From IMG/VR virus record IMGVR_UViG_3300043399_000877, positions 248,001-312,000 of that record: DNA of 64,000 bases; one strand, written 5' to 3'. The notes beneath the pieces are model-generated. The model saw nothing but the letters and a program-made list of their open reading frames with translations. It was not told where the DNA came from and did no database searches. Of this stretch, positions 5,480-25,515 are shown piece by piece; position 1 is the stretch's first letter; each line of letters starts with the position of its first letter. The position numbers and the translations under genes were made by a program.

Positions 5480-5489
5480 TGGATACACA

Positions 5490-7530: not shown

Positions 7531-8655
7531 ATGAACACATATTGTAATTTAGCAAATACGGGACTTTATGTTTCTATAAAGGGAGATATAAGTCATTGTT
7601 GTATACAAAAAAACAGACAAAAAATCGACCTTGGCAATTATACTGATGCAAGCGAATTTTATAAAGAAAACTCGCATCTGTCATCAATACGACAGGACTT
7701 AAATCATAAAAATATAAAAAACTCTGCATGTCAAAATTGCTGGAAGGTCGAAGAATCTGGGTTAGCAAGCAAACGACAGCGCGAAAATGAATTAGAAACA
7801 ACTTCTGAAACAGAACTGCGTCACTTAGACTTAAGACTTACAAATAAGTGTAATTTGCAATGTAGAATGTGTTCTCCTACCGAAAGCAGTCAAATTGAAA
7901 AATTGGCTTACGAGTTAAACGATCCCATATTAATGCAATTTTCAAAAAATAAATTAACTGATTATGTTGATTTGTCAACTTTTCTAAATAGCTTTTTAAA
8001 CGTTAAAACATTAAAAACGATTCGGTTTGCAGGTGGTGAGCCATTTATAATGGAAGAAGTTAATGAGTTTTTGTCAAAGTTAATTGAAAATAACATGACA
8101 GATCTTGAAATTGAGTTTATAACCAATTGTACTAGTGCAAGAACGCAAGTAATTAATAAGTTGGAAAAATTTAAAAGAGTTGTGTTGGGTTGCAGTATCG
8201 ACGGTGTGGAAGATGAATTCGAGTATCAAAGGTATCCTGCAAAGTGGTCATCAGTTGAAAAAAACTTTATAAAATTTTATAATAGCAAGCTTCATGTAAA
8301 CATAACACCGTGTATAAGCTTTCTTACATATCAGACTTTGGATAAATTTTTTAATTGGGCCAATCAGTTTCCTAACGCAAGGGTTTTTTATAACGAAGTT
8401 GAACAAAGTTTTATGGACTTTAGGCTGATCCCAATTGAGCATAGACAAGATTTTATAAGTAAATTTAAAGATATAAAATTTGCAAATGCGCAAAATAATT
8501 GGATACAATTTCAAAAAAAATTAATGTATGAAGAAAAAACATTGACCGACGAAGATAAAAAACTTTTAATACACTATATTAAGATATGGGATTACAAGAC
8601 AAACAAGAAATTTTTAGAATCGTATCCGTGGGCAGAAAAATTAATAAATGAATAA
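7531..8655 (+). CDS. Radical SAM enzyme with N-terminal twitch/SPASM-like cluster
   Basis: N-terminal YC...HCC...CQNC, then CNLQCRMC, GGEPF, TN, SIDG. Confidence 0.92.
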   Translation: MNTYCNLANTGLYVSIKGDISHCCIQKNRQKIDLGNYTDASEFYKENSHLSSIRQDLNHKNIKNSACQNCWKVEESGLASKRQRENELETTSETELRHLDLRLTNKCNLQCRMCSPTESSQIEKLAYELNDPILMQFSKNKLTDYVDLSTFLNSFLNVKTLKTIRFAGGEPFIMEEVNEFLSKLIENNMTDLEIEFITNCTSARTQVINKLEKFKRVVLGCSIDGVEDEFEYQRYPAKWSSVEKNFIKFYNSKLHVNITPCISFLTYQTLDKFFNWANQFPNARVFYNEVEQSFMDFRLIPIEHRQDFISKFKDIKFANAQNNWIQFQKKLMYEEKTLTDEDKKLLIHYIKIWDYKTNKKFLESYPWAEKLINE

Positions 8656-9604
8656 ACTCTATAAGATAGAAACAGTAAACAATATTTTAGTAGTAGATTG
8701 GATATTATCCAATGTGTGTAACTACAAGTGTAGCTACTGCGGTCCCGACAGTAATGGTGGCGACCAGTATTGGCCGGATATTGAAAATTGCGAAATAGCA
8801 ATAAAGAAAATAACAGAGCAAAGCACTCACGATTACCGAATTTACACAATACTCGGCGGAGAACCAACCGTATGGAAAAATTTTACTAAATTAGCACAGA
8901 TAATAAAAGAAAACGACCCAAATAGTTTAGTAAACATTTTAACGAATGCCTCAAGAACTATAAATTGGTGGAATAGAACAAAGCCGTTTTTAGATAAAGT
9001 ATCAATAAGTTTTCATCACGAGAGTGCAAATGTAGACCACGTAATCGATGTGGTTAATAATATAAAAACCGATTGTCAAACAAACATACAATTGCTGATG
9101 GACATAAATCATTTTGATAAGTGTGTTGGAATTTTTGAAAAACTCAGAGACAACACCGACGTTCCAATTCAAATAAAAAAGTTACAGATTGAGTTTGGTA
9201 AGCATCAATGGATGCCATATACTGAAGATCAAAAAAAACTAATGATAGAATTGCATATGCAAACGTCCGGTAGACCAACCTCAAAAAGAAATAAGACAAG
9301 TTTGGGAATAAATTGTTTTTATGATGATGGTACAGTTGTGCGACAGGGAAACCATGAGTTGATACAGAAAGGTTTAAATAAATTTTATAACTGGAAGTGC
9401 AACATTGGGCAAGACTTGCTTGTGATAAAACCTAATGGAAATATAATACCAGCAAATGCCTGTAATAATCACATGGTGATAGGAAACATTAAGACAGACC
9501 CTGAAAACATCAAGTTGCTTACTGAAAGTGTTATTTGCAAATATAATGAATGCACTTGTGGTAGTGATATTGAAATAACAAAAATTGCACCCTCTATCAT
9601 ATAA
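8648..9604 (+). CDS. Radical SAM enzyme with C-terminal Cys cluster
   Basis: CNYKCSYC, LGGEPT, ISFH. C-terminal WKCNIG...C...CKYNECTC. Confidence 0.92.
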   Translation: MNKLYKIETVNNILVVDWILSNVCNYKCSYCGPDSNGGDQYWPDIENCEIAIKKITEQSTHDYRIYTILGGEPTVWKNFTKLAQIIKENDPNSLVNILTNASRTINWWNRTKPFLDKVSISFHHESANVDHVIDVVNNIKTDCQTNIQLLMDINHFDKCVGIFEKLRDNTDVPIQIKKLQIEFGKHQWMPYTEDQKKLMIELHMQTSGRPTSKRNKTSLGINCFYDDGTVVRQGNHELIQKGLNKFYNWKCNIGQDLLVIKPNGNIIPANACNNHMVIGNIKTDPENIKLLTESVICKYNECTCGSDIEITKIAPSII

Positions 9605-9638
9605 CAATATCTAAAAATAGCTAAACAATAAATATTGC

Positions 9639-11054
9639 ATGTCCGATAAATTACCTTCAGAAACATTTTGTATATTACCCTGGGTTCATTTGAGCACCCG
9701 TCCCGATGGATCAATGAGAGTTTGCTGTACAGCAAACGCGAGCAGCGTGGGTCCCACAAACGATAAAGAGTATGGTGGTCAAGTTGGTATTTTAAAAACC
9801 GACGATGGGAAGCCAAATAACTTAAATGTGAGCGACTTTTTGTCCAGTTGGAACAGCAACTATATGAAAAATGTTCGCAAACAAATGCTAAATGGAGAAA
9901 AACCCCCGAGTTGCTTGAAATGCTATAAAGAAGAAGCGGCTGGCCATCGAAGTAAGAGAATGTGGGAAACTGATTATTGGAAGCAGCGTGTAGACTTGGA
10001 TAAAATATTGTCCGAAACAAACGATGACGGCAGTGTACCACCACAGCTTGCATACATAGATCTTCGATTTGGTACTAAATGTCAACTTGCCTGTGTCATG
10101 TGCAGCCCACATGACAGCAGTGGGTGGATAAAAGATTGGAAGGCAATTTTTCCAGAAGTTGAAAATGCAAGTCTTAGAGAAATTATGCAATGGGAAAACA
10201 AAGGCAGTACCAACGGTAGCAGCTATAATTGGCATAAGCAAAATCCCAGATTTTGGAAACAGTTTTACGAACAAATTCCAAATATGCAACAGATTTATTT
10301 TGCAGGAGGTGAAAGCCTCATTATTGAAGAACATTACGAAATTCTTGAAGAGTGCATTCGTCAAGGATATGCTAAAAATTTGGAACTTAGATACAACTCA
10401 AACGGAGTTGAGTGGAGAGAAGATCTTTTTGACTTGTGGAAAGAATTTAAACTTGTACGGTTTCACTATAGTATAGATAGTATTAAAGAAATGAACGACT
10501 ACATTCGGTATCCTAGTAAATGGAAACGACAAGAGGAAGTATTTCATATACTGGATAGTGAAACTAGTGATAACGTAGAAATCACCATAGCCTGTGCAGT
10601 ACAGGCACTTAATGTATATTACTTGCCTGATTTTATACAATGGAAATTAGAACAAGGATTTAAAAAAGTCAATATGTGGCCGTTTGGCGCTGGTGGAATT
10701 AGCCAGCATTTTGTGTACTGGCCAGCACATTTGAATGTTAAAGTATTACCTAAGTGGTTTAAAGAAAAATGTCGAAAAAAATACGAATCATGGTATCCCT
10801 GGTGGGAAGCAAACTGGGAAAAAGGTATACCCGCCTGGCACAAGGATACTGTTACTTTTGAACAATGGCGTAATGCTGAATATGGAATTAAACGCCTGAA
10901 TGGGATACTTAGCTTTATGGAAAGCGAAGACTGGAGCCAAAGGCTTCCTGAAATGGAAGAATTTTTAAATCTTTGTGATAAGCAACGTGGTGTTAGCTTT
11001 TCAGAAACATTCCCAGAAATGAAGGACATATTTGGCAATGACGAATCGTCTTGA
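9639..11054 (+). CDS. Radical SAM enzyme with N-terminal twitch/SPASM-like cluster
   Basis: FCILPW...VCC...CLKC, then CQLACVMC, AGGES, SNG, SIDS. Confidence 0.92.
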   Translation: MSDKLPSETFCILPWVHLSTRPDGSMRVCCTANASSVGPTNDKEYGGQVGILKTDDGKPNNLNVSDFLSSWNSNYMKNVRKQMLNGEKPPSCLKCYKEEAAGHRSKRMWETDYWKQRVDLDKILSETNDDGSVPPQLAYIDLRFGTKCQLACVMCSPHDSSGWIKDWKAIFPEVENASLREIMQWENKGSTNGSSYNWHKQNPRFWKQFYEQIPNMQQIYFAGGESLIIEEHYEILEECIRQGYAKNLELRYNSNGVEWREDLFDLWKEFKLVRFHYSIDSIKEMNDYIRYPSKWKRQEEVFHILDSETSDNVEITIACAVQALNVYYLPDFIQWKLEQGFKKVNMWPFGAGGISQHFVYWPAHLNVKVLPKWFKEKCRKKYESWYPWWEANWEKGIPAWHKDTVTFEQWRNAEYGIKRLNGILSFMESEDWSQRLPEMEEFLNLCDKQRGVSFSETFPEMKDIFGNDESS

Positions 11055-12501
11055 TATACTAATATGCATTGTACCTAAAATTTTTCCAGATGCGCCCACA
11101 GTGGGCCCAGCAGTGTTAAAAGCTCATATTGAATCTGCTGGGTTTTCTTGTGAAGTTGTTGATTTAAACGTAAAATTATACAATGAGTTTAAAAAACACG
11201 GAGATGAAGATCAGTTTTTTGAAAAAGACAGTGCATTCAGATGCCGCGATGTTGAAAAAGTAGATGAAGTTTTCGGAGAAAACTATAAAAAATACAAATA
11301 CGTTTTTGATGAGTGGATTGATTTCTTTAAAGAGAAAAACCCAAAATGGATAGGCTTGAGTTTGTTAACAGTGATGAGCAGTGCTGTTGCAATAAAACTA
11401 AGTAAACTTATTAGAGAACATTTACCAGAAACAAAAATAGTGTGGGGTGGCGCCGAAGTTACAAGAGGCCGAACCATGCAGTATTTTGAAAAGGGTTTAA
11501 TAGATCATTGGATAAGTGGTGACGGGGAAGTTCCCATTGTTAAATTGTTAAACGGTGATTTAGACAATAATGGAATAGATGATCGTCCCCCGTTTCAGTT
11601 AATCAACATAAACGAAGTGTTGGTGCCCAACTATGATGATATAGAATGGAACGAATACCCGTTTATTAATCAACCCAAACCTGCATATATTACAGGAAGT
11701 CGGGGGTGTGTTAAACGCTGTGATTTTTGTAATGTTTATGAAATTTGGCCACAGTATGTTTTTAGAAGCGGTGCGCATATAGCCAATGAAATAATACAAG
11801 TTAAACAGAAGTATGATAGAACTACTTTTAAATTTACAGACAGTTTAATTAATGGTAGTATGAAAGCATTTAGGGAAATGCTGCAAATATTAGCAGATTA
11901 TAATAAAACACGAAAAACAGATGACGAAAAAATAAGATGGCATAGTCAATGGATAGTTAGAAATTTTAGACAAAGCCCTGAAGAGGATTATCGTCTCATG
12001 AAGGAAAGTGGGTGTTACGGTCTTGACGTTGGTGTTGAAAGTTTTAGCCAAAATGTAAGATTTGAGTTGGGGAAAAAATTTACAGACGACGATATGTGGT
12101 GGTGTTTTGAAATGCTACAAAAGTATGAGATACACCATACACTATTAATGTTTGTTGGGCACCCATTTGAAACAGACGCCGATCACCAAATTACTTTGCA
12201 AACTATTAGACAGTTATACGAAAAAGGATATGCTGGAAAAAAGACTGATGAAAAACGGTTAATGTATATTAGTATGGCAAACACTATGATGCTTTCTGAT
12301 GATACTCCAGTATGGAATAAAGTAAAAGATGAACTAGAGTATTGGCATAACGACTGGAATTGGAAATTTCGTGATAACACGCTTGAAGTAAGATTGCGAC
12401 GCCTCGAGGAAGCAAACGATCTGTTATCTGAACTTGCGGGTCAAGAAAGATCTTGGATGGTACGTAAAAAGATTGAGATGATAAAGAAAAGTTTTGGATA
12501 A
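11032..12501 (+). CDS. B12-binding (class B-like) radical SAM enzyme
   Basis: N-terminal cobalamin-domain motifs (PTVGPAVLKA, WIGLS, IVWGG), then SRGCVKRCDFC, FTDSLING, GVES. Confidence 0.88.
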   Translation: MAMTNRLDILICIVPKIFPDAPTVGPAVLKAHIESAGFSCEVVDLNVKLYNEFKKHGDEDQFFEKDSAFRCRDVEKVDEVFGENYKKYKYVFDEWIDFFKEKNPKWIGLSLLTVMSSAVAIKLSKLIREHLPETKIVWGGAEVTRGRTMQYFEKGLIDHWISGDGEVPIVKLLNGDLDNNGIDDRPPFQLININEVLVPNYDDIEWNEYPFINQPKPAYITGSRGCVKRCDFCNVYEIWPQYVFRSGAHIANEIIQVKQKYDRTTFKFTDSLINGSMKAFREMLQILADYNKTRKTDDEKIRWHSQWIVRNFRQSPEEDYRLMKESGCYGLDVGVESFSQNVRFELGKKFTDDDMWWCFEMLQKYEIHHTLLMFVGHPFETDADHQITLQTIRQLYEKGYAGKKTDEKRLMYISMANTMMLSDDTPVWNKVKDELEYWHNDWNWKFRDNTLEVRLRRLEEANDLLSELAGQERSWMVRKKIEMIKKSFG

Positions 12502-13565
12502 TGCCGTTTTGTAGTGCTCTAACAAATCATATGTGTATTACAGTGGCGGCAAGTTGGCGCCCTTGTTGTCGTTTTAATAACTTTCCGTCTGTAGACATAA
12601 ATCAAGTTGATTTCAAGTCTTATCAGGAAAGCAGTTTTTATAAGTCTATTAAGACAGACATGGAATCTGGTTGGGCAGCTGGATGTAAAAAATGCAAAGA
12701 AGAAGAAGAGCGCGGTCAAACAAGTTTACGCGAAGTTTTGAATAAAACTTTATCAGGAAGCTCGGATATTGAATACATTGAAATTAGTTTAAGTAATAAA
12801 TGTAATCTTGCTTGTAAAATGTGCTCACCCACATACAGTACTTTTTGGAATAAGTTAGTATCTGACACACCATCGTTAACTGAATATTACAGTACAGTTA
12901 CGCAACCAAAAATCAGTGTAGAAAAGATTTTTTCATCTGTTGACTTGTCTAAGTTAAAAAAAATTAAATACCTTGGCGGAGAACCATTTATAACTCCAGA
13001 AATAAAAGAATTGTTTGATTTTTTAGAGGCAAAGGGAGTAATACAGAATATTGAATTTGAATGTAATACAAATTGTACGCTGTTCCCCACTAAATGGTTA
13101 ACCTACTTAGATAAATTTAAAAACGTAATAATAGAGTTGAGCATTGATGGTATTGGAACTGTTAACGATTATATTAGATACGGGAAAACTTGGGATGTTA
13201 TTGAAAAAAATATTGTAAAATGGTCCAAAACCAATTATAATGTAAGCATTTATAGCACTGTGCAGGCATATAATTTACATGATATGAAAAATGTTAAAGA
13301 ATTTGCAAGTAGTTTGTCATTAAAACATTATAGCAGCCTATTAGTGGTACCTGAGTTTCTAAGTGTACATGCCTTGCCGCCGGAATATTTAGAAATAGTT
13401 AAAGACGATTATAACCAAAAGTATTTTAAAAGTATAAAACACAACAACAGATTTTCTGAATTAACTAAATTTACAAAGACGATGGATATTTCCACCGGAT
13501 TGTATTTAAAAGATGTAATACCGTTATTACACACATTTATGGAGAATAAAAATGAGCCAACTTGA
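12501..13565 (+). CDS. Radical SAM enzyme with N-terminal twitch/SPASM-like cluster
   Basis: FC...PCC...CKKC, then CNLACKMC, LGGEPF, SIDG. Confidence 0.92.
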   Translation: MPFCSALTNHMCITVAASWRPCCRFNNFPSVDINQVDFKSYQESSFYKSIKTDMESGWAAGCKKCKEEEERGQTSLREVLNKTLSGSSDIEYIEISLSNKCNLACKMCSPTYSTFWNKLVSDTPSLTEYYSTVTQPKISVEKIFSSVDLSKLKKIKYLGGEPFITPEIKELFDFLEAKGVIQNIEFECNTNCTLFPTKWLTYLDKFKNVIIELSIDGIGTVNDYIRYGKTWDVIEKNIVKWSKTNYNVSIYSTVQAYNLHDMKNVKEFASSLSLKHYSSLLVVPEFLSVHALPPEYLEIVKDDYNQKYFKSIKHNNRFSELTKFTKTMDISTGLYLKDVIPLLHTFMENKNEPT

Positions 13566-14445: not shown

Positions 14446-15051
14446 ATGATAATAAACGATGCAATGGAGATACCCGGGCAAACCGATGAGAAACAGCATC
14501 TCTGGTATCAAAAAATTATTGAGTGGTTCCATTATCCTCCTGCGGTGTTGGAAATAGGGTGTGCTTGGGGTAGAAGTTCATGGGCATGGTTGGATTGTAT
14601 GAACATGGATGGAAGTTATTTAGAAATTTTAGATAACTGGTCATATTCAAAAAATTTTAAACAACTTAACGGATTTAAACTATCTAATGAAACCTATTAT
14701 AAATTTATAAGTGATGTATCCCCCAATTACGATCAAAAAGAAATATTACTATATAATTTAAAGCAACATAAAAATTTTCAAAAAATTAAAAAAATTCATA
14801 CAGGCGTATATTCGGATGCATCAAAACATTATGATATTGTTTATTTAGACGATGATCATAGTCAAAAAAATGTATCAAATGAACTAGAGCATTTTAATGG
14901 TGTTCCAGTTATGTGTGGTGATGATTTTGAAAATACTCATCCAGGTGTTATAAAAGCAATTTGTAAATTTTATCACAATAATTTTAACAAATACAAGTTA
15001 TATATAGATCCTGATGCTAGGTTTTGGGCGTTAAAAAGAACGGACATGTAA
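14446..15051 (+). CDS. Class I SAM methyltransferase (Methyltransf_24-like)
   Basis: LEIGCAWGRSS, DIVYLDDDHS, MCGDDF. Confidence 0.8.
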   Translation: MIINDAMEIPGQTDEKQHLWYQKIIEWFHYPPAVLEIGCAWGRSSWAWLDCMNMDGSYLEILDNWSYSKNFKQLNGFKLSNETYYKFISDVSPNYDQKEILLYNLKQHKNFQKIKKIHTGVYSDASKHYDIVYLDDDHSQKNVSNELEHFNGVPVMCGDDFENTHPGVIKAICKFYHNNFNKYKLYIDPDARFWALKRTDM

Positions 15052-16208: not shown

Positions 16209-16249
16209 TTTACTATTTTTAAAAATTAAATATAACAAAAAGGTGTATA

Positions 16250-17227
16250 ATGGACTGGAATGCTGTAGTAATTATTAGAACAAATGCTAAGTCTATTGCA
16301 GAATCTGTAACAAATGAAATAAAGAACGAGTTCCCATACAGAACTTCTGAATTTTATAAATGTACTAGAGATTTGGAATTTATATTGCAAGCATTGTCGA
16401 CATGCATACAATTAGACAATACGCAAGCTGTTGATGATGTAATACGCATGTTCTACAAAGGTGGCAAACTTAGGTTAAAGTCGATCGATGTTGAGTTAAT
16501 AGCATATGATAAACTTAAATTAAAACTTTTTGAGCTATTGTCTAAAAATGAAATAAAAGATTCTACTAAAGAAATTATTTCAAATTGCATTATTTTATTA
16601 AAAACTTCGCTGAACAGTGGGTATATTGGTGTCGAACAATCCTGGGAATATAGAAAAAATTATAAAATTTTTACATCAGACCCTGTGCCTAAATATTTAG
16701 AAAATGTGATAGATAATATATTGATACATTGTCCTATGCAGGATTCTAAAACCACAGAATTTGTAATATTAAAAACAACTTATGATGACATAAAGTTGCG
16801 AGAAAACTTAACAAAACATATTTTTAAAAATGATGCTAGTGGATTTCATGAAATAGCTCCCATAACTGCACCGTTGGTTTATTATTGCTGTAATAAAACC
16901 AATCCTGAATCTAATTCTTTTTTGAACATAGGTTTGCACGGCGGCGCAGCACTTGCAGAAATTAGAAATAATGGTTTTGATTTTAGTTTTATAGGCTGCA
17001 CATCTGATAATGTTTCTAACAAAACAGAGAAGGAACTTATTAAACGCATTCAATCTCGATTTAATTTAGATTTTGATATATGCTTGCCGTGCGTTGCGTT
17101 TTGCATCGGAAAAGCAAACAGGGAAGTTAATACTATCAATGTATACAAATGTAAAGATGGGACTGAATTAAGATATAGAACAACACTTGAACCATCGGTA
17201 ATAAAACCAAAGGTTCTTTTTACTTAA
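16250..17227 (+). CDS. Fusion of an N-terminal helical (KCxRD) domain and a nitroreductase-like domain
   Basis: KCTRDLEFIL in the N-terminal half. The C-terminal half has RKNYKIFTSDPVP...HCP, TAPLV, GFDFSFIGC and FCIGK, resembling the nitroreductase fold. Confidence 0.55.
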   Translation: MDWNAVVIIRTNAKSIAESVTNEIKNEFPYRTSEFYKCTRDLEFILQALSTCIQLDNTQAVDDVIRMFYKGGKLRLKSIDVELIAYDKLKLKLFELLSKNEIKDSTKEIISNCIILLKTSLNSGYIGVEQSWEYRKNYKIFTSDPVPKYLENVIDNILIHCPMQDSKTTEFVILKTTYDDIKLRENLTKHIFKNDASGFHEIAPITAPLVYYCCNKTNPESNSFLNIGLHGGAALAEIRNNGFDFSFIGCTSDNVSNKTEKELIKRIQSRFNLDFDICLPCVAFCIGKANREVNTINVYKCKDGTELRYRTTLEPSVIKPKVLFT

Positions 17228-18074
17228 TATTATTTTTTAAAAACCTTAGTAATGGCCTAACGCCCACTGGCCGGTCATCGAACGTTTTAGCCAAATGGAT
17301 TGCTTTTGTAGGTTTTAAATTAAAATCTTTTAAAACTTGCTGATATTCTTTTTCATAAGTCCTCCAAAAATATTCGGGACCAAAGTATTCCATAAATTTT
17401 ATGCCCATGCTTACGATAGCCTGACTATTCATATTAAAATCGTTCATTATAGTAATCGGGCCATTCTGGGTGCCCCTTGCAAATCTTAGGCCAATTCTGT
17501 TTCCGCCCAGTCCGCCCTTGCTGAGGCTTATGCAAAACGTATCTATTGCTGGGTGTGAAAAATCAAATTCTATATCTCGTATACAACTTATCCACGCTCC
17601 GTCAATGTGTACTTTTATCCCTAAATTATGACAGGCGTCCAATATTTCTTTCATTTGAGGGTGAATATCACCAAAGAACGGAAATGGCATAGCTATTAGT
17701 AGTTCTTTATTTGGGTCCAATGTTTCAACGGTTGTATACACAATGTTGGGATTTAACCTCCAATGATATTTGTAATCATTTTCAAATATCATCAAGTTGC
17801 CTTTTCGTTGATATAAATCGTCTATGTATTGAGTACATCCCTGTGTAATGTCGAGACGACTAAATTTATCTAAACCCGAAAACGTGCTGTATTTGTGGTC
17901 TTTAATCCATTTTACAAAATTTTCTTTAAATATCTCATCTAAATTACTAGTATGTATTGGATTTTCTACATAAAATTTATCATAAAATTTGTTTATGTTA
18001 GAGTCGTACATTGGTTGTGGACGATCATACTGCAACCATTCTTCTGTGTATTGTCTATGTGTGCTGTCTCTCAT
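17220..18074 (-). CDS. PLP-dependent fold-type I enzyme (aminotransferase-like)
   Basis: VHIDGAW (PLP-binding DxA) and SLSKG...NRIG (Schiff-base Lys). It is the only inverted gene inside the + strand island. Confidence 0.75.
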   Translation of the reverse strand: MRDSTHRQYTEEWLQYDRPQPMYDSNINKFYDKFYVENPIHTSNLDEIFKENFVKWIKDHKYSTFSGLDKFSRLDITQGCTQYIDDLYQRKGNLMIFENDYKYHWRLNPNIVYTTVETLDPNKELLIAMPFPFFGDIHPQMKEILDACHNLGIKVHIDGAWISCIRDIEFDFSHPAIDTFCISLSKGGLGGNRIGLRFARGTQNGPITIMNDFNMNSQAIVSMGIKFMEYFGPEYFWRTYEKEYQQVLKDFNLKPTKAIHLAKTFDDRPVGVRPLLRFLKNNIK

Positions 18075-18086
18075 ATAAATATTTAT
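18074..18086. promoter_or_regulatory. Back-to-back ATAAATA late-promoter-like motifs (palindrome ATAAATATTTAT)
   Basis: TATAAATA on + (18074-18081) and ATAAATA on - (18080-18086) lie between divergent genes. The T4 late consensus is TATAAATA. Confidence 0.55.
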
Positions 18087-18131
18087 GTGTACTTTATAAT
18101 GCAAATAATAATGTGATTTTCGGAGAAATTA

Positions 18132-19229
18132 ATGAAAAAAAAGCCATTTTGCTATGCTCCATGGGTTTCTGTAAGATATCGGAATACGACAGATAATAGA
18201 GTGTCACCATGTTGCCAATGGAACGATGAACACTTTACAGGTAACATAACAGAATATTATAATTCTAAATTTTTAAAAAATGTAAAATCAAATATGATTA
18301 AACATAACATGAATGAAATATCCAAAACATGTATAGAATGTATAAATGCAGAAAAACATAATGTTGAATCCTCACGAGAATATTACAATAATGCTGTGCG
18401 CATGGGAACGTTTGTTCCTGGACAACTTAACAAACTAGATCTTAGACCAGATACTCTATGCAATTTAAAGTGCATTATGTGCAGTCCAAAAAGTTCTAGT
18501 TTAATTGAAGAAGAGTTAATAAAACACGAAAATTTTCAACCATTTGAGTACTCTGATACAACTGACGTTGTCGACTTAGATCTATCAAATTTAAAAGCTT
18601 TAAAATTAGTTGGTGGTGAGCCTACAATAAGTAAAAAAATGTTTTACATCATGGATCATTTAATAGAAAAAGATATCGCAAAAAATATAAGCATTGAATA
18701 TATAACAAATTGCACAAGTGTTAATAAAAAATGGTTATCTCGTGTTGAACAATTTAAAAAACATATGGTTACAATGTCAGTAGACGCAACTGGTAAGTGT
18801 TTTGAGTACATTCGTCATGGTACTTCATGGGAACTAGTTGAAAGAAATATATTAAAGTTAACGGAAATAGCAGACGATTATGATTTTAATATAGTTGCAC
18901 AAGCAACAAACTTTGCAGTAATTGAAGATTGGTTTGAATATTTTATTCAATATGACATTCAGCATATCAGAATGTCGCATTTTTACGGAGATTATCCATT
19001 GGGCCTTAATGTTATACCTGATTACCTAAAACAAGAAAAAATAAATTATCTTGAAAAATTTGATCATCCACTTGCAACTCAGGCAATCACTTATCTTAAA
19101 AATTCTAAGTTTAGTAAAAAAACATTTGACTTATTTTGGAAAAATACTGAAATACGCGACAAAAGAAGAAATGTAAGCATTTTTGATGTGAGTCCGGTAT
19201 TTGAAAAAATGAAAAATAGTCACATGTAA
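18132..19229 (+). CDS. Radical SAM enzyme with N-terminal twitch/SPASM-like cluster
   Basis: FCYAPW...PCC...CIEC, then CNLKCIMC, GGEPT, SVDA. Confidence 0.92.
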   Translation: MKKKPFCYAPWVSVRYRNTTDNRVSPCCQWNDEHFTGNITEYYNSKFLKNVKSNMIKHNMNEISKTCIECINAEKHNVESSREYYNNAVRMGTFVPGQLNKLDLRPDTLCNLKCIMCSPKSSSLIEEELIKHENFQPFEYSDTTDVVDLDLSNLKALKLVGGEPTISKKMFYIMDHLIEKDIAKNISIEYITNCTSVNKKWLSRVEQFKKHMVTMSVDATGKCFEYIRHGTSWELVERNILKLTEIADDYDFNIVAQATNFAVIEDWFEYFIQYDIQHIRMSHFYGDYPLGLNVIPDYLKQEKINYLEKFDHPLATQAITYLKNSKFSKKTFDLFWKNTEIRDKRRNVSIFDVSPVFEKMKNSHM

Positions 19230-19276
19230 CCGGATAGGCAAGATACTAGAATAAATATGTTAAATTGGGGATCAAC

Positions 19277-20008
19277 ATGGATAACAAGTTCTTTATACCT
19301 GACAATGTAACAGGTATAGTTATAAAATTGTCAGGTGGTGCTGACAGTTCTATACTATATTATGGGTTATGTAAACACATAGTTGAGAACAATTTAAGTA
19401 TACCTATATATGTAACATCTATGGACACAAATAGAAAACCTTGGTACAGCCATTATGCAAAAAAAGTCATAAATTTTACAAAACAAGAAACTGGAATATC
19501 ACCCGTAGAGCATAGAATTCATTTCTTAGACGGCAACTGGACTATGGATGATTATGTACAAACTCAACATGATTTAATGATGTCAGTTATTGATGACAAA
19601 CTTGCAAATGTGGCGTATAGCGGGTTAACTCAAAATCCAACTAGAAAAGATTTACACAGAACTCGAAAACATAAAGATTTTAACAAAAACGGTTTAAAAT
19701 ATCTTGATGAAAATCTAAACGGAACAGATTCTAGTAGAAATGATCATTCAAATAAAAAAGTAGTAAATTACAACGGGCACTTCATAATGATCAATCCGTT
19801 TATACACAAAACAAAAAAAGAAGTATTTAACTGGTATAAACATTATAATGTACTAGATACTCTTTTTCCATTAACTTATAGTTGTGAAGAATCAGATAAT
19901 GAATACAAGAAGTTAATTAAAGTTGAAGACGGGTTTGCAGAAATGTCGCACTGTGGATTTTGTTGGTTTTGCATGGAACGTATATACGCATTTGGAAGAC
20001 TCGTATGA
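19277..20008 (+). CDS. QueC-like PP-loop ATPase
   Basis: KLSGGADS PP-loop, NPF..TK, TYSC...HCGFCWFCMER Zn site. Confidence 0.8.
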   Translation: MDNKFFIPDNVTGIVIKLSGGADSSILYYGLCKHIVENNLSIPIYVTSMDTNRKPWYSHYAKKVINFTKQETGISPVEHRIHFLDGNWTMDDYVQTQHDLMMSVIDDKLANVAYSGLTQNPTRKDLHRTRKHKDFNKNGLKYLDENLNGTDSSRNDHSNKKVVNYNGHFIMINPFIHKTKKEVFNWYKHYNVLDTLFPLTYSCEESDNEYKKLIKVEDGFAEMSHCGFCWFCMERIYAFGRLV

Positions 20009-21228
20009 CACCATGTATTTTGCCTTGGATAAATTTTAGTACTAATACATTTGGTAGACCAAGAACTTGCGGTTATGCCGATCAAGCTGTAGTCAAAAGA
20101 GCACAAGTTAAATTAAAAGGCAGTAGTATAGAAGACGAATGGAATAACGATTATTTTAAAAAGATACGCAGAGACTTTTTACAAGGCGAGTGGCCTGAAA
20201 ATTGCAAACGATGTGAGTACGTGGAACAACTAAATGGTTCCAGTAAGCGTATAGAAGAAAACAAATATCATTATGAGTCAAATAAACATTTAATTGATTC
20301 TACAGCGCCAGACGGTAGCGTCCCATATTATCCGCCCAATATTGATATTAGAGTGGGTACAATATGTAATTTAAAGTGCATTCATTGCGGAACTGGTGCA
20401 AGCAGCAAGTGGAATGAAGACAAATCCTTATTAAATAAATACCCAAATACTGAATTTTATAACATTGACAACAAATGGATAGAACAAGATAGCTTTATTT
20501 GGGATAACATAAAAGAAAACTTGAGTAGTACCCGTAAGTTTAATTTCTTAGGAGGCGAACCGTTTGCAAATAAGCAACATAACCGGTTTATTAAAGAAGT
20601 ATGTGACACTGATGCTGCTAAAGAAATAACACTGACATATGTGAGCAACGGAACACTGTTAACAGACACCATTTTTCAGCAACTTGTGAAATTTAAAGAA
20701 GTCATTATCAGACTAAGTTTAGATGCTATCGGAATTCCGGGAGAATATTTTAGATTTCCGATATCATGGAAAACATTTAAAACAAAACTAGAATTAATGC
20801 AAAAATATGCAAACAATAATCCGCATGTTGACATTGGGGTCCAGTGGACTTGTAGCAATATAAGCATGTTCTATCTAGTTGAAACATATGATTTTATAAA
20901 ACAGCATTATCCTAATATTAAGTTTATTTTTGCGAATCATGTTGAGTGGCCAATTCATATGAGTGCGCAAGTTTTGCCGCATGAATTAAAAAAAATAACT
21001 CAAGATAAAATTGAGTCATATAATTTTGAAAATAACTCCCAGTACGTTCCATTTTATATAAGCCATATGTGCGAAAAAGATTTATGGGGTACTCACGGAA
21101 ATACATTTATGAATTATTTAGATGACCTAGACGCAGCCAGAAAAATAAGTTGGAAAGACAGTTTTAAAGAAATGGAATTACAGAAATATGATCCCAGATG
21201 CAACAACCATATGAATGAAATGAAATAA
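20005..21228 (+). CDS. Radical SAM enzyme with N-terminal twitch/SPASM-like cluster
   Basis: PCILPW...TC...CKRC, then CNLKCIHC, LGGEPF, SNGT, SLDA. Confidence 0.92.
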   Translation: MTPCILPWINFSTNTFGRPRTCGYADQAVVKRAQVKLKGSSIEDEWNNDYFKKIRRDFLQGEWPENCKRCEYVEQLNGSSKRIEENKYHYESNKHLIDSTAPDGSVPYYPPNIDIRVGTICNLKCIHCGTGASSKWNEDKSLLNKYPNTEFYNIDNKWIEQDSFIWDNIKENLSSTRKFNFLGGEPFANKQHNRFIKEVCDTDAAKEITLTYVSNGTLLTDTIFQQLVKFKEVIIRLSLDAIGIPGEYFRFPISWKTFKTKLELMQKYANNNPHVDIGVQWTCSNISMFYLVETYDFIKQHYPNIKFIFANHVEWPIHMSAQVLPHELKKITQDKIESYNFENNSQYVPFYISHMCEKDLWGTHGNTFMNYLDDLDAARKISWKDSFKEMELQKYDPRCNNHMNEMK

Positions 21229-21270
21229 AATAAATGTTTGTGTAATCTGGCGAGTTGGTATATATATAAT

Positions 21271-22395
21271 ATGAAAATTAATATGTCTGAAGATTTAAAA
21301 TGGAGTGAATATGATTTTACAAAAATCCCATTTGACGATATCGTACAAGTAGGTCAAAGAACTCTTTTGTATCGAGATCTTTTTACCGTTAGTTGGTTGC
21401 TTGGTCGCTTTTGCAATTACCGGTGTAGCTATTGTTGGCCATATGCAAGATCAAATACAAAAGATCATCGACCAACCGACCTATGCCTCAAAACAATTGA
21501 TGAGATCAAACGACAAGCTAGAGAAAACGGATTCAATAGTTTCCATTTCAGTCTCTCAGGAGGAGAACCAACGTTTCATCCCGGATACCTCGAGATATTA
21601 AAGTATCTTGCCGACGACACTCCGAATACAAATTATACTAGCATACACATGACCAGTAATTGTAGTAGAAATATGGCATGGTTTGAGCAATATGTTGAAT
21701 ATGCAAAACCATTTCATAGAGCAAGTATCACAGCTAGTTTACACACCGAGCATGTAAACACTCCTGAGCGAATGCAAGAATTCGCAGACAAGTTGATTTT
21801 TTGTCAAGAACATGACGTCCAGGTCACTATTAACATGGTAATGGTACCTGAGTGGTTTGAGCGTGATTGGGAAAATGCTCTATTTTTTCATGAGCAAGGC
21901 ATAAATGTAACGCTAAAACCACAAAGTGATCCCACTGCCAGTCGAGTAGTAGATGGGTATTCACAAGACATGCTTAATCGTTTATGGAACGGTATGCCAC
22001 AGCGGGCGTATACTGAAAGTAAAAGAAAATGGGCTAGTCGCCCTCAACCCAAGTTTGTAGTGCCAGTAGTTAATGGTGTTGACGACAAATCTGTACCTGC
22101 ACATATGCAGATTGAATTTGTAGACAAAAACGGAAAAAAATGGTATATGGACCAAGCAGAGCGGTTCAACGCATTTGGATTTAACAAGTTTAAAGGTTGG
22201 AGTTGCAACAGTGGTTATCAGGGAATAATCATACGCGAGCCCGACGGGAGTATAAAAAGATCATACAGTTGCCACGATGTTCCACTTGGCAATATAGAGA
22301 CTGGATTTAAATTGTTTAAATCCCCCATGCCGTGTACTACTGAAAGCTGTGTGAGTAGTGCGGATAGTAAAATACCAAAACAAAGGAAGGATTAA
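21271..22395 (+). CDS. Radical SAM enzyme with C-terminal Cys cluster (same subtype as 8648-9604)
   Basis: CNYRCSYC, SGGEPT, ASLH. C-terminal WSCNSG...SC...CTTESC. Confidence 0.92.
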   Translation: MKINMSEDLKWSEYDFTKIPFDDIVQVGQRTLLYRDLFTVSWLLGRFCNYRCSYCWPYARSNTKDHRPTDLCLKTIDEIKRQARENGFNSFHFSLSGGEPTFHPGYLEILKYLADDTPNTNYTSIHMTSNCSRNMAWFEQYVEYAKPFHRASITASLHTEHVNTPERMQEFADKLIFCQEHDVQVTINMVMVPEWFERDWENALFFHEQGINVTLKPQSDPTASRVVDGYSQDMLNRLWNGMPQRAYTESKRKWASRPQPKFVVPVVNGVDDKSVPAHMQIEFVDKNGKKWYMDQAERFNAFGFNKFKGWSCNSGYQGIIIREPDGSIKRSYSCHDVPLGNIETGFKLFKSPMPCTTESCVSSADSKIPKQRKD

Positions 22396-22399
22396 AAAC

Positions 22400-23464
22400 A
22401 TGCCAATATGTAAAGCACTCTATAACCAAGTATGTGTTGAAATCGGTGGAGTTTATAAACCATGCTGTTCATATGTTGGGGACAGTGGTATATCAGTAAA
22501 CGACATGACCCCAAATGAATTTTTAAAATCTGATTATATAGAAAATATAAGAAAAAACATGGAAGGGGATTTATGGGATTCCGGTTGCGTTGGATGCAAA
22601 GTGCGTAGTGAATCTGGGCTCCACACGTTGAAAGATACCTATGACTTTTATTGTAAATCTGATATAGGTACTTTTGAAATGATTGAAATTTCAGTAAGTA
22701 ACAAGTGTAATAACCAATGCAGAATGTGCGATTCTAGGCACAGTAGTTTATGGCAAAATACTTTGGGTTTTGGTAATTCTCCTAAATCTTATTATGATTT
22801 GCAAGCATTAATGAATAATCTAGACGGCAGTGATATAAAGGTAATAAAATATTTAGGTGGTGAACCATTAATAACTGATGAAATAAATCAAGTCTTCGAT
22901 TTTATCAAAAAAAATAAAGAAAATAAAATTTCATTTTATTTTAATACTAACCTATCAGTACCTCCAGAAAAATATCTTAGCGAATTTGAAAATATAGAAA
23001 AATTTGTGATTGGGTATAGCATTGACGGTGTAGGCGCAACTAATGAATATATAAGAGATGGAAGCAATTGGGACACTGTTGTTAGGAATTTAGATAAATG
23101 GGAAAAATTCTTTGAATCCAGATCCGATCAGAGTGAAAGATACGTCCACACCGTATTACAAGCATACAACTATCATGATATTGAAAATATATATAAGTTT
23201 AGTAGTTCGTATGGGTTAGAGCATTTTACACCTCCTATAATTGCGCCACATGAGTTTACATTAAATGCATTGCCTAAAGAGTATATAGAAAAGTATGCCA
23301 CCAGTAGAACGGCAAAATATGTTGATAACCATTCATATAATGCATCGTTGTACGATAAATTAGTAAAAACAACAATTTATCATGATAAGTTATTTCAAAA
23401 ATCAATAAATAATTTTATACCTGAATTGTATTTTTTAAGTAAGAGCAATAATGATACACCATGA
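22400..23464 (+). CDS. Radical SAM enzyme with N-terminal twitch/SPASM-like cluster
   Basis: IC...PCC...CVGC, then CNNQCRMC, LGGEPL, SIDG. Confidence 0.92.
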   Translation: MPICKALYNQVCVEIGGVYKPCCSYVGDSGISVNDMTPNEFLKSDYIENIRKNMEGDLWDSGCVGCKVRSESGLHTLKDTYDFYCKSDIGTFEMIEISVSNKCNNQCRMCDSRHSSLWQNTLGFGNSPKSYYDLQALMNNLDGSDIKVIKYLGGEPLITDEINQVFDFIKKNKENKISFYFNTNLSVPPEKYLSEFENIEKFVIGYSIDGVGATNEYIRDGSNWDTVVRNLDKWEKFFESRSDQSERYVHTVLQAYNYHDIENIYKFSSSYGLEHFTPPIIAPHEFTLNALPKEYIEKYATSRTAKYVDNHSYNASLYDKLVKTTIYHDKLFQKSINNFIPELYFLSKSNNDTP

Positions 23465-24947: not shown

Positions 24948-25515
24948 AATTAATGACTTGCCCATTTTGGATTTAACAAGTGAGTACGACAACCTAATAA
25001 AAGAAGGTAGAATATGGTATTCTGAAAGAGAACCAAATCAAATATGTTTAAATTCAACAATCAATAAACTTAATGATATGCATTACGGTGCTGGCAGCTT
25101 GGTGTTTGATTGGGACTTGGTTGGAACACTTGACGATTCGGGAAACGTCATAACGTCGCCGACGTTAAGAGAAACTCCATTAGAGGAAAGTGATTTTACA
25201 GAATTATGCTCTCAGTTTAAAGGAACGTTATTCGAGGATGCATATGTTGCATTACAAAAAAAATACAATCTTGGTAGAGTAAGGATAATGCGATCAAAAC
25301 CTAAAACTTGTTTATCTTGGCATTACGACTATGATGTCAGAGTACATTATCCATTAAAAACGTATGAGGGGTGTTTGATGGTTATAGAAGATGAAGTTTG
25401 CCACCTTACTGCTAATAAATGGTGGTATACAGAAACTCAAAAAATGCATACTGCATTCAACGCAAGTGCCCAGGAGAGAATACATTTAGTAGCTACAGTC
25501 ATTTCTAGTAAGTGA
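24931..25515 (+). CDS. Aspartyl/asparaginyl beta-hydroxylase-like 2OG-Fe(II) oxygenase
   Basis: RVRIM, WHYD, RVHYPL, HTAFN, RIHLV. Confidence 0.8.
   Translation: MKNFYEINDLPILDLTSEYDNLIKEGRIWYSEREPNQICLNSTINKLNDMHYGAGSLVFDWDLVGTLDDSGNVITSPTLRETPLEESDFTELCSQFKGTLFEDAYVALQKKYNLGRVRIMRSKPKTCLSWHYDYDVRVHYPLKTYEGCLMVIEDEVCHLTANKWWYTETQKMHTAFNASAQERIHLVATVISSK

What the first reader, a model, noticed from the sequence alone, without database searches (positions are those of the whole stretch)
7531..23464. Seven radical SAM paralogs carry the auxiliary Cys cluster N-terminal to the catalytic core
Seen: the proteins at 7531, 9639, 12501, 15051, 18132, 20005 and 22400 begin with C...(P)CC...CxxC (a single Cys in place of CC at 20005), followed by an (S/T)x(R/K) motif, before CX3CX2C. 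Known: characterised SPASM/twitch domains are C-terminal. Inference: this is a permuted, biochemically uncharacterised subfamily expanded into highly divergent paralogs, suggesting one reaction type applied to many sites or substrates.
Basis: partly seen in the sequence, partly recalled or inferred. Interest (0 to 1): 0.62.

Follow-up and report, generated by a model that had tools for sequence, protein, structure and literature searches.

The report
Phage island of permuted-twitch radical SAM enzymes
Seven neighbouring genes in a 382-kb jumbo phage encode radical SAM enzymes whose extra iron-sulfur ("twitch") domain sits in front of the catalytic core instead of behind it; NCBI already catalogues this family, I found no study of its function, and here it forms a shuffled toolkit that probably tailors a cell-envelope sugar or lipid.

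Summary
All seven proteins carry C…(GX4)C(C)…CXXC, then an (S/T)x(R/K) motif, ahead of CX3CX2C. All seven score above the curated cut-off of NCBIfam NF033640, "N_Twi_rSAM, twitch domain-containing radical SAM protein". The permuted subfamily is therefore already catalogued. I found no paper or solved structure for it.

Three lines of evidence identify the N-terminal domain as a twitch domain:
- Profile comparison with the C-terminal tails of neighbouring canonical rSAM genes gives 93.5% probability.
- A PDB profile search gives a weak sequence hit to BtrN.
- An AF2 model of the isolated domain has the BtrN twitch domain as its best match among 48,161 PDB chains.

The window lies in a T4-type jumbo phage. 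Fourteen rSAM genes sit within about 30 kb, and an eighth N_Twi gene lies just outside the window. The paralogs are old lineages, not a local expansion: each is 49-92% identical to an ortholog in other viral contigs but only 24-33% to its neighbours.

Three rSAM genes recur across loci and are adjacent to one another in two Bdellovibrionota chromosomes. One of those loci lies next to glycosyltransferases.

Best reading: radical tailoring enzymes of an envelope glycoconjugate pathway. The substrate is inferred, not shown.

The parts
7531..8655 (+). N_Twi radical SAM paralog 1 (374 aa)
   Evidence: NF033640 224.8 bits, cut-off 170. Weak Pfam SPASM hit at residues 5-71. Ortholog at 78% identity in L008.
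9639..11054 (+). N_Twi paralog 2 (471 aa), the conserved 'anchor' of the island
   Evidence: NF033640 425 bits. More than 4500 relatives, and 80-92% identity in 246 IMG/VR stretches. At least 60% identity in 86 of 87 loci. 61% identity in two Bdellovibrionota chromosomes.
12501..13565 (+). N_Twi paralog 3 (354 aa), the protein that was modelled
   Evidence: NF033640 237.4 bits. AF2 model with pLDDT 96 and pTM 0.92. The isolated N-terminal domain matches the BtrN twitch domain.
15051..16208 (+). N_Twi paralog 4 (385 aa from the ATG at 15051)
   Evidence: NF033640 218.7 bits. Ortholog at 79% identity in L008.
18132..19229 (+). N_Twi paralog 5 (365 aa)
   Evidence: NF033640 222.3 bits. Best relative among the fetched loci is 49% identical.
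20005..21228 (+). N_Twi paralog 6 (407 aa), GX4C with a single Cys
   Evidence: NF033640 296.8 bits. Single Cys seen. Ortholog at 77% identity in L008 and L017.
22400..23464 (+). N_Twi paralog 7 (354 aa), a rare lineage
   Evidence: NF033640 194.7 bits. Only 17 relatives by word search. Shares a well-supported clade with paralog 3.
4403..5479 (+). Radical SAM with the same Cys signature at the C-terminus (canonical twitch orientation); second conserved core gene of the island
   Evidence: CX3CX2C at residue 18, and a C-terminal C…GLALPCC…CX3C. NF033640 matches only profile positions 108-357. At least 60% identity in 74 of 87 loci. 49% and 47% identity to the neighbour of the anchor in the two Bdellovibrionota loci.
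5439..6500 (+). Radical SAM with a C-terminal twitch (C…GX4CC…CXXC)
   Evidence: Sequence. NF033640 matches the core only, positions 105-356, 66.7 bits.
6509..7528 (+). Radical SAM with a C-terminal twitch
   Evidence: Weak Pfam SPASM hit at residues 254-329. C…GNIWPCC…CNNC at the C-terminus.
8648..9604 (+). Radical SAM (318 aa) with a Cys-rich C-terminal tail
   Evidence: PF04055. Sequence.
11032..12501 (+). B12-binding radical SAM, methyltransferase-like
   Evidence: PF02310 plus PF04055. Weak hits to PhpK-type and RiPP C-methyltransferase families, all below cut-off.
21238..22395 (+). Radical SAM (385 aa); third conserved core gene of the island
   Evidence: PF04055. At least 60% identity in 46 of 87 loci. 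67% and 62% identity to the neighbour of the anchor in the two Bdellovibrionota loci.
4186..4410 (+). Conserved 74-aa ORF overlapping the start of the 4403 rSAM gene
   Evidence: 75-82% amino-acid identity in 72 of 87 loci. Differences per codon position are 0.21, 0.11 and 0.50. Its role is unknown.
3351..4199 (+). Conserved 282-aa protein, class I methyltransferase-like
   Evidence: At least 40% identity in 62 of 87 loci. Nearest named Atlas cluster is Methyltransf_31, score 0.95. No Pfam hit.
1346..3370 (+). 674-aa protein with about four internal repeats; weak glycosyltransferase lead
   Evidence: Repeats visible in the translation. Homologs lie beside GT2 genes in G167. Atlas GT2 lead of 0.86 only.
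175..1419 (+). UDP-glucose/GDP-mannose dehydrogenase family gene, near the left end of the low-GC island
   Evidence: PF00984 and PF03721.
17220..18104 (-). 294-aa accessory protein that recurs with N_Twi arrays
   Evidence: Homologs in 15 viral loci and in both Bdellovibrionota arrays. A PLP-enzyme reading rests only on my inspection of the sequence.
19265..20008 (+). QueC-like PP-loop protein a
   Evidence: Weak PF06508 hit. SGGADS and CXXCXXC are visible in the sequence.
23451..24104 (+). QueC-like PP-loop protein b
   Evidence: PF06508 32 bits.
24931..25515 (+). Asp/Asn beta-hydroxylase-family (2OG oxygenase-type) protein
   Evidence: PF05118 43 bits. The same family recurs in G003 and L096.

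Best explanation
The seven proteins, plus an eighth just upstream of the window, belong to the curated N_Twi_rSAM family. These are radical SAM enzymes of the SPASM/twitch lineage in which the roughly 80-residue twitch domain has moved from the C-terminus to the N-terminus.

Inferred mechanism: the first Cys, the GX4C Cys and the CXXC pair bind an auxiliary [4Fe-4S] cluster, as the four equivalent Cys do in BtrN. The CX3CX2C cluster cleaves SAM to a 5'-deoxyadenosyl radical, which abstracts a hydrogen atom from the substrate. The auxiliary cluster serves as electron acceptor or substrate anchor.

The genes lie in a low-GC accessory island of a T4-type jumbo phage, between genes with tail-fibre-type domains. 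Three conserved rSAM genes (4403, 9639, 21238) and a conserved methyltransferase-like gene form a recurrent core. The remaining N_Twi paralogs, together with a B12-rSAM, 2OG-oxygenase-like, PP-loop and methyltransferase genes, form a variable set reshuffled between related viruses.

The most likely role is stepwise radical tailoring of a non-protein envelope molecule, either a nucleotide-sugar-derived glycan or a glycolipid. Different paralogs would give different products.

Shown: family membership, domain homology and order, conservation of the Cys residues, the phage setting, the age of the paralogs, and the shared cassette in bacteria.
Inferred: cluster binding, the chemistry, the substrate, and the benefit to the phage.
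For: Family and fold:
- NF033640 is exceeded by all seven proteins and by eight places in the genome.
- The AF2 model has pLDDT 96 and pTM 0.92. It shows an N-terminal hairpin and helices, then the rSAM core from about residue 88.
- The core matches BlsE, viperin, SkfB, NifB, MoaA and anSME at Z 11.2-11.6, over residues 88-317 only.

Identity of the twitch domain:
- The Pfam SPASM model aligns weakly to residues 5-71 and 11-96 of two paralogs.
- The BtrN C-terminal region aligns to profile positions 4-72, E 1.3e-3.
- The isolated-domain model (pLDDT 92) has BtrN residues 166-241 as top hit of 48,161 chains: Z 3.7, rmsd 2.2 A over 71 residues. The SuiB SPASM domain ranks third.
- hhalign of the N-terminal profile against the C-terminal tails of neighbouring canonical rSAMs gives 93.5-94.2% probability, E about 1e-7. 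The G-x-v-PCC and CXXC columns align. Reversed-sequence and unrelated controls score below 1%.

Phage setting:
- gp23-type capsid protein at 332 bits.
- T4-type DNA polymerase, closest to jumbo phages Phosso, Atu_ph07 and 121Q.
- Genes with tail-collar and Mtd_N domains flank the island.

Core versus variable genes. Age of the paralogs.

Glycoconjugate context:
- A UDP-glucose dehydrogenase family gene lies near the left end of the island.
- In Bdellovibrionota genome G167, the three core rSAM genes sit beside four GT2 glycosyltransferases and a PMT_2 (GT-C) protein.
- The G003 array holds a UDPGP-family gene and two Asp/Asn-hydroxylase-family genes.
- Related viral islands carry aminotransferase, SDR, FA_desaturase and Asp/Asn-hydroxylase-family genes.
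Against: - No experiment bears on any of this. Cluster binding and activity are inferred from homology.
I could not measure Cys-Cys distances or confirm that the N-terminal domain packs where a C-terminal twitch does.
- The structural match to BtrN is weak in absolute terms (Z 3.7; Foldseek E 3.7).
- The glycoconjugate assignment rests on gene neighbourhood in three settings only.
- Most characterised SPASM/twitch enzymes act on peptides.
- A conserved 74-aa ORF overlaps the start of one of the three core rSAM genes.
- The phage island itself holds no clear glycosyltransferase. The phage's GT2 genes lie at 150 and 178 kb.
- FA_desaturase and LpxO-like hydroxylases would fit a lipid as well as a sugar.
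Confidence: 0.55

Rival explanations
1. The enzymes are peptide or protein maturases (RiPP-like). They would modify a ribosomal product such as the conserved 74-aa ORF at 4186-4410, or a virion protein encoded next to the island, by thioether, C-C, epimerisation or methylation chemistry.
For: - Secondary NCBIfam hits are mostly to RiPP maturases (PapB, WgkB, CcpM, SCIFF, SkfB), all far below their cut-offs.
- Structural neighbours include SkfB, CteB, SuiB and anSME.
- A real, strongly conserved small gene overlaps the start of the 4403 rSAM gene in many of the 72 loci that carry it.
- A B12-rSAM, a methyltransferase and an Asp/Asn hydroxylase together recall proteusin-type tailoring sets (my own knowledge).
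- The island lies between genes with tail-fibre-type domains.
Against: - No RRE/PqqD-type domain was reported by Pfam in any of the seven proteins.
- The 74-aa protein is evenly conserved along its length and shows no variable core.
- That ORF is absent from the Bdellovibrionota loci that keep the three core rSAM genes.
- The bacterial contexts are rich in glycosyltransferases.
- The similarity to RiPP enzymes does not exceed that to MoaA, BlsE or viperin.
Confidence: 0.2
2. The island makes a hypermodified DNA base or nucleotide, for example a 7-deazaguanine or a polyamine/amino-acid-decorated pyrimidine, to evade host restriction.
For: - Two QueC-like PP-loop genes lie in the island.
- Polyamine-type genes lie beside it (CANSDH-like, an Orn/DAP-decarboxylase fold, AMP-binding).
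- Radical SAM and PLP enzymes take part in known thymidine hypermodification pathways (PMC5889632, found; abstract only read).
Against: - The genome has no TGT/DpdA-type transglycosylase.
- The QueC-like matches are weak and partial.
- The same cassette sits in bacterial chromosomes next to glycosyltransferases.
- No QueD, QueE or FolE equivalog scored above cut-off among the island proteins that were scanned.
Confidence: 0.06
3. The N-terminal Cys residues do not hold an Fe-S cluster. They would bind zinc or form a purely structural knuckle, making these single-cluster rSAM enzymes with a decorative domain.
For: - Four-Cys motifs of the C…C…CXXC type can bind zinc.
- Some twitch-like domains (BlsE, viperin relatives) lack a cluster (my own knowledge).
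- No metal analysis exists.
Against: - The motif has the canonical SPASM/twitch spacing CX9-18GX4C…CXXC.
- It aligns with the cluster-binding part of BtrN by sequence and by fold.
- It is homologous to the C-terminal twitch of sister enzymes.
- All four Cys are invariant or nearly so across 117 sequences that share only 15% mean column identity.
Confidence: 0.08

Closest known systems
NCBIfam NF033640, N_Twi_rSAM (twitch domain-containing radical SAM protein)
   Same: All seven proteins match nearly the full 398-position model above the curated cut-off.
   Different: Nothing structural differs; these are members. The family name carries no function. I found no paper that mentions it. What appears new is the setting: a jumbo phage island.
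BtrN (butirosin 2-deoxy-scyllo-inosamine dehydrogenase), the founding twitch enzyme; PDB 4M7S/4M7T
   Same: It has a four-Cys auxiliary-cluster domain with a hairpin followed by a helix. It is the best structural match of the isolated N-terminal domain (Z 3.7, rmsd 2.2 A, 71 residues, BtrN 166-241). It also gives a weak profile match. It acts on a carbohydrate-like small molecule (my own knowledge).
   Different: In BtrN the domain follows the core; here it precedes it. There is no detectable orthology: sequence identity is 17%. BtrN's top-level family models do not score here.
The C-terminal-twitch rSAM genes of the same island (window 4403, 5439, 6509)
   Same: They share the core (NF033640 positions 105-357) and the Cys signature G-x4-(P)CC…CXXC. 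The two domains align profile to profile at 93.5-94.2% probability.
   Different: The domain order is the canonical one. These are the nearest non-permuted relatives and show that both topologies coexist in one cluster.
anSME, SkfB, CteB, MoaA and BlsE (solved SPASM/twitch-group rSAM enzymes)
   Same: They are the best matches to the catalytic core: Z 11.0-11.6, Foldseek TM 0.39-0.44.
   Different: Only residues 88-317 align. None has an N-terminal twitch domain, so no solved structure has this topology.
LipA, MiaB/RimO and TYW1 (rSAM enzymes whose auxiliary cluster is bound by N-terminal Cys)
   Same: The auxiliary cluster ligands precede the CX3CX2C motif (my own knowledge). They appear only as weak structural matches, Z 8-9.
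   Different: Their N-terminal segments are not twitch/SPASM folds, and their Cys spacing is unrelated. The resemblance is in layout, not ancestry.

Membership tests
NCBIfam NF033640 N_Twi_rSAM | Whole-protein HMM score at or above the curated cut-off (170 bits), with near full-length coverage | tested here: met
   Scores of 224.8, 425, 237.4, 218.7, 222.3, 296.8 and 194.7 bits. Coverage starts at profile position 1-4 and ends at 359-398 of 398. Eight places in the genome exceed the cut-off.
NCBIfam NF033640 N_Twi_rSAM | Twitch-type Cys motif located N-terminal to CX3CX2C | tested here: met
   Alignments A1, A2 and A3 and motif counts in 260 relatives.
Radical SAM superfamily (PF04055) | CX3CX2C cluster motif, GGE SAM-binding motif and a partial TIM-barrel core | tested here: met
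   PF04055 is above the gathering score in all seven. C101, C105, C108, G159, G160 and E161 are invariant in 117 sequences. The core fold matches solved rSAM enzymes at Z about 11.
Radical SAM superfamily (PF04055) | Reductive cleavage of SAM | not testable with these tools
   Needs purified, reconstituted enzyme.
SPASM/twitch subgroup of radical SAM enzymes | Auxiliary-cluster domain with CX9-15GX4C … CXXC, and a hairpin plus helix | tested here: met
   Motif. Hairpin and helices in the models. BtrN twitch domain is the top structural hit. SPASM Pfam and BtrN profile hits are weak.
SPASM/twitch subgroup of radical SAM enzymes | The domain is a C-terminal extension of the core | tested here: not met
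   The domain occupies residues 1 to about 85, before the core. These are therefore a permuted variant of the subgroup, not canonical members.
SPASM/twitch subgroup of radical SAM enzymes | The domain binds one (twitch) or two (SPASM) [4Fe-4S] clusters | not testable with these tools
   Only four to five conserved Cys are present, enough for one cluster. Metal content is unknown.
RiPP radical SAM maturases | RRE/PqqD-like leader-recognition domain, or a cognate precursor peptide | tested here: inconclusive
   No RRE-type Pfam hit in the seven proteins. A conserved 74-aa ORF exists beside one of the three core rSAM genes. The complex prediction gave no verdict.
7-deazaguanine (preQ0/DpdA) DNA-modification systems | DpdA/TGT transglycosylase together with QueC, QueD and QueE | tested here: not met
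   No PF01702 match in the genome. The QueC-like hits are weak and partial.

The most novel reading that the evidence does not exclude
Uncultivated jumbo phages and Bdellovibrionota may share a combinatorial biosynthetic system. A fixed set of three radical SAM enzymes would build a scaffold. A freely reshuffled library of permuted-twitch rSAM paralogs (at least 63 lineages at 35% identity within 87 loci) would then decorate it by chemically distinct radical reactions. The result would be strain-specific envelope or virion molecules under diversifying selection. That would make N_Twi a large reservoir of undescribed radical chemistry and a new kind of phage host-interaction module.
Probability: 0.25. 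Interest if true: 0.75.

Novelty: new member of a known kind. Interest (0 to 1): 0.45.

Why it matters
The family does, however, appear to be unstudied: I found no paper, no solved structure and no assigned function.

This window adds three things:
- Both domain orders coexist side by side in one gene cluster, which gives a natural pair for asking what the position of an auxiliary cluster domain does.
- The family forms large, reshuffled arrays in environmental jumbo phages and in Bdellovibrionota chromosomes, around three conserved rSAM genes.
- The bacterial neighbours point to envelope glycoconjugate chemistry, which gives a starting point for substrate screening.

If the enzymes prove active, they are candidates for new radical sugar or lipid chemistry, and for a phage function placed next to genes with tail-fibre-type domains.

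Tried and rejected
- **Literature.** Six searches found nothing on an N-terminal twitch domain, on NF033640, or on phage rSAM arrays.
- **Bad family id.** One search failed because the id carried a version suffix. It was repeated correctly.
- **MAG labels.** The 77-87% identical hits to the anchor carry Flavobacteria, Crocinitomicaceae and Neisseriaceae MAG labels; a Dojkabacteria MAG contig (58%) was not examined further. These short contigs look like the viral islands, so I treat the labels as unreliable for host assignment.
- **Isolated phages.** Only three hits at 21-23% identity (RsoM2USA, Vibrio K566 and K567).
- **Foldseek on the full model.** It aligns only the core (TM 0.40-0.44). No solved structure with this topology was found.
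- **PDB sequence searches of four accessory proteins.** Nothing was found.
- **Complex prediction, 74-aa ORF with the 4403 rSAM.** No verdict (ipSAE 0.00-0.01). This is not evidence either way.
- **7-deazaguanine DNA-modification idea.** Rejected because the genome has no TGT/DpdA.
- **DGR idea for the Mtd_N protein.** Not supported; the genome has no reverse transcriptase.
- **First all-against-all BLAST.** It timed out and was rerun on unique sequences.
- ** selection bias.** The first hhalign used sets picked with a Cys regex. It was repeated without that selection and with controls.

Full report
**Observation.** The seven ORFs exist as described. In the seven-way alignment the invariant residues, numbered on the 7531 protein, are C5, C24, C67 and C70, followed by the radical SAM triad C107, C111 and C114. 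The 20005 protein has one Cys where the others have CC. The (S/T)x(R/K) motif is present in all seven, and pairwise identity is only 22-26%. The pattern extends far beyond this genome. In 117 diverse relatives the CXXC and CX3CX2C cysteines are invariant, and the first two Cys, a Glu, a Ser and an Arg are present in at least 90%. Among 260 unique relatives, 174 carry GX4CC, 42 carry CC without the Gly, and 35 carry GX4C with a single Cys. S/T-x-R/K sits nine residues after CXXC in 193 of them. The single-Cys forms keep the canonical GX4C spacing, so the second Cys of the pair is a family trait rather than an obligatory ligand.

**What the proteins are.** All seven score above the curated cut-off of NCBIfam NF033640, "N_Twi_rSAM, twitch domain-containing radical SAM protein": 195-425 bits against a cut-off of 170, over nearly the whole 398-position model. 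Pfam finds the Radical_SAM domain in all seven and a sub-threshold SPASM match on the N-terminal 70-90 residues of two. It is not biochemically characterised as far as I could establish. Six full-text searches found no paper on it. No PDB entry matches beyond the catalytic core.

**Structure.** An AlphaFold2 model of the 12501 protein, built on the 117-sequence alignment, is very confident (pLDDT 96, pTM 0.92). It shows a short hairpin and four helices in residues 1-83, then the rSAM core. Against the PDB only residues 88-317 align. BlsE, viperin, SkfB, NifB, MoaA and anSME are tied at Z 11.2-11.6, and Foldseek TM scores are 0.40-0.44. The N-terminal 90 residues were also modelled alone (pLDDT 92) and compared with 48,161 representative chains. 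Only three chains reached Z 2. The best was residues 166-241 of BtrN, its twitch domain, at Z 3.7 and rmsd 2.2 A over 71 residues. The SPASM domain of SuiB ranked third, and Foldseek also ranked BtrN first, though not significantly. A profile of the seven paralogs aligns its positions 4-72 to the same part of BtrN (E 1.3e-3). Each signal is weak alone, but all point to the same domain.

**Evidence for permutation.** The island also encodes rSAM proteins with the ordinary layout. The 4403, 5439 and 6509 proteins start with CX3CX2C and end with C…G-x4-(P)CC…CXXC (or CX3C). NF033640 matches only their core, profile positions 105-357. A profile of N-terminal segments from 260 N_Twi proteins aligns with a profile of the last 115 residues of 130 such proteins at 93.5% probability (E 2.3e-7, 67 columns). 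The Cys and Gly columns are in register. Reversed tails score 0.6% and an unrelated protein 0.3% (a first version is). The two architectures are thus related by relocation of one homologous domain. I could not obtain model coordinates. Whether the relocated domain packs on the same face of the barrel, and whether the four Cys are within cluster-binding distance, remains unchecked.

**Genomic setting.** The window is bases 248001-312000 of a 381,886-bp IMG/VR virus record that CheckV estimates as complete. The record has a gp23-type major capsid protein. Its T4-type DNA polymerase is closest to those of jumbo phages Phosso, Atu_ph07 and 121Q. Fourteen of the fifteen CX3CX2C-bearing ORFs in the genome lie between 241 and 271.5 kb: eight N_Twi genes, three C-terminal-twitch rSAMs, two other rSAMs and one B12-binding rSAM. 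This stretch has 0.33 GC against about 0.41 downstream. A tail-collar-domain protein lies upstream and an Mtd_N-domain protein downstream. Interspersed are methyltransferase-like genes, two QueC-like PP-loop genes, an Asp/Asn-hydroxylase-family gene and several unknowns. A UDP-glucose dehydrogenase family gene lies near the left end.

**Origin of the paralogs.** The 9639 protein has more than 4500 relatives, and 246 matching IMG/VR stretches encode relatives; the 80 loci kept are 80-92% identical. In 87 fetched loci it is flanked by anywhere from none to ten further rSAM ORFs. Each paralog in the window is closest to an ortholog in another viral contig (49-92% identity) and only 24-33% identical to its neighbours. 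On a maximum-likelihood tree of 119 representatives the eight copies are scattered. Each sits with viral orthologs at SH-aLRT 84-100, and only 12501 and 22400 share a small clade. The 260 unique N_Twi ORFs in these loci fall into 63 clusters at 35% identity. The array is therefore an assembly of old lineages reshuffled between viruses, not an expansion in place. Three rSAM genes are widely retained: 9639 in 86 of 87 loci at 60% identity or more, 4403 in 74, and 21238 in 46. The methyltransferase-like 3351 gene is found in 62 at 40% or more.

**Cellular counterparts.** Those three rSAM genes are adjacent in a Bdellovibrionia MAG contig of 494 kb, at 61%, 49% and 67% identity. They are adjacent again in a 2.9-Mb contig of another Bdellovibrionota genome, at 61%, 47% and 62%. 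In the second locus they lie beside three more N_Twi genes, four further rSAM genes, homologs of the 17220 and 1346 proteins, four GT2 glycosyltransferases, a PMT_2 (GT-C) protein and an FAD oxidoreductase. A third locus holds 14 N_Twi genes in 30 kb, with a UDPGP-family gene, two Asp/Asn-hydroxylase-family genes, and homologs of the 3351 and 17220 proteins. The family passes its cut-off in 45 of 201 sampled Bdellovibrionota genomes, often with eight or more hits. It passes in 3 of 201 Bacteroidota and in none of 14 reference genomes. Other large viral contigs carry 10-12 rSAM genes in 20 kb, with B12-rSAM, QueC-like, Asp/Asn-hydroxylase, FA_desaturase and aminotransferase genes.

**Mechanism.** By homology, the CX3CX2C cluster cleaves SAM and the resulting radical abstracts a substrate hydrogen. 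The N-terminal four Cys most likely hold a second [4Fe-4S] cluster that accepts an electron or positions the substrate, as in BtrN and anSME (established knowledge of those enzymes). Three conserved rSAM genes combine with a variable set of rSAM, methyl-, hydroxyl- and amido-transfer enzymes, and nucleotide-sugar or glycosyltransferase genes recur next to the cassette. This pattern fits stepwise tailoring of an envelope glycan or glycolipid. I put about 0.85 on the structural part and about 0.4 on the glycoconjugate substrate, giving 0.55 for the combined statement.

**Rivals.**
- A peptide or protein substrate remains possible (0.2). Most SPASM/twitch enzymes act on peptides. A genuine, evenly conserved 74-aa gene overlaps the start of the 4403 gene in many of the 72 loci that carry it. 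However, no RRE domain was found, and that ORF is missing where bacteria keep the three core rSAM genes.
- A DNA-modification role is unlikely, because the genome has no TGT/DpdA.
- A non-Fe-S role for the N-terminal Cys cannot be excluded without metal analysis.

**Novelty and verdict.** The proteins are new members of a known, curated, functionally unassigned family. The inference of a permuted subfamily is correct but not new. The inference of an expansion is wrong in its implied history. What appears undescribed is the setting: a widespread, reshuffled rSAM island in uncultivated jumbo phages, sharing its core with Bdellovibrionota glycan-type clusters, with both domain orders side by side. 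Interest is moderate (0.45).

**Limits.**
- Nothing was tested experimentally.
- The neighbourhood evidence comes from three contexts only.
- The taxonomic labels on the short MAG contigs that resemble the viral islands are unreliable.
- The GC content of the virus record is uneven, so a mosaic or partly chimeric assembly is not excluded. The island itself is embedded between phage genes and recurs in many viral contigs.

Noticed in passing
window 4186-4410 (+): A 74-aa ORF between the 3351 and 4403 genes. It is 75-82% identical in 72 of 87 loci, is evenly conserved along its length, and shows a strong third-codon-position bias in its differences. It often overlaps the rSAM start by 4 nt. It is absent from the Bdellovibrionota loci. 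Partner or substrate of the core rSAM? Complex prediction gave no verdict.
   Followed up: partly
whole virus record (genome 70-110 kb versus 210-280 kb): GC content ranges from 0.50-0.58 (70-110 kb) to 0.33-0.36 (the rSAM island and its surroundings), with about 0.41 elsewhere. This suggests a mosaic genome, a large acquired region, or a partly chimeric assembly.
   Followed up: no
window 25516-26874 (-), 28118-29521 (-), 30066-31226 (-): A saccharopine-dehydrogenase-family gene (carboxynorspermidine-dehydrogenase-like), an AMP-binding enzyme and an Orn/DAP/Arg-decarboxylase-fold gene lie on the opposite strand. They look like a polyamine-type module next to the rSAM island. None was found in the 87 related loci.
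   Followed up: partly
window 1346-3370 (+): A 674-aa protein made of about four internal repeats (recurring '…TEMFW…' blocks), of which only the last keeps a DGD motif. Its C-terminal domain is a common ~230-aa unknown of tailed phages. Homologs sit beside GT2 genes in a Bdellovibrionota chromosome. The glycosyltransferase lead is weak.
   Followed up: partly
window 19265-20008 (+) and 23451-24104 (+): Two divergent QueC-like PP-loop proteins (SGGADS plus a C-terminal CXXCXXC), in a genome without a TGT/DpdA gene. They may act as amidotransferase-type tailoring enzymes rather than in preQ0 synthesis. Similar genes recur in related islands (L096).
   Followed up: partly
window 31243-32358 (-): A protein with an Mtd_N (major tropism determinant N-terminal) domain borders the island. 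The genome has no reverse transcriptase, so a diversity-generating retroelement is not evident.
   Followed up: yes
window 33963-35228 (-): An HNH endonuclease (phrog_1314, E 3e-120) lies in a local GC-rich patch (0.49 against about 0.41). It may be a mobile homing-type insertion.
   Followed up: no
G003:C1:745000-775000 (loci L091, L092) and G167:C1:1404001-1440000 (L093, L094): Bdellovibrionota chromosomes carry their own N_Twi arrays. One has 14 copies in 30 kb. The other has four N_Twi genes (the anchor ortholog among them) and six further rSAM genes beside four GT2 genes and a PMT_2 gene. MoxR and DUF58 genes flank the three core rSAM genes in two genomes.
   Followed up: partly
window 13552-14445 (+) and 17220-18104 (-): Two unknowns recur with the arrays. 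By eye, the first has an HxD…H pattern suggestive of a 2OG/Fe(II) oxygenase, and the second an SLSK motif suggestive of a PLP enzyme. Neither has a Pfam or PDB sequence match.
   Followed up: partly
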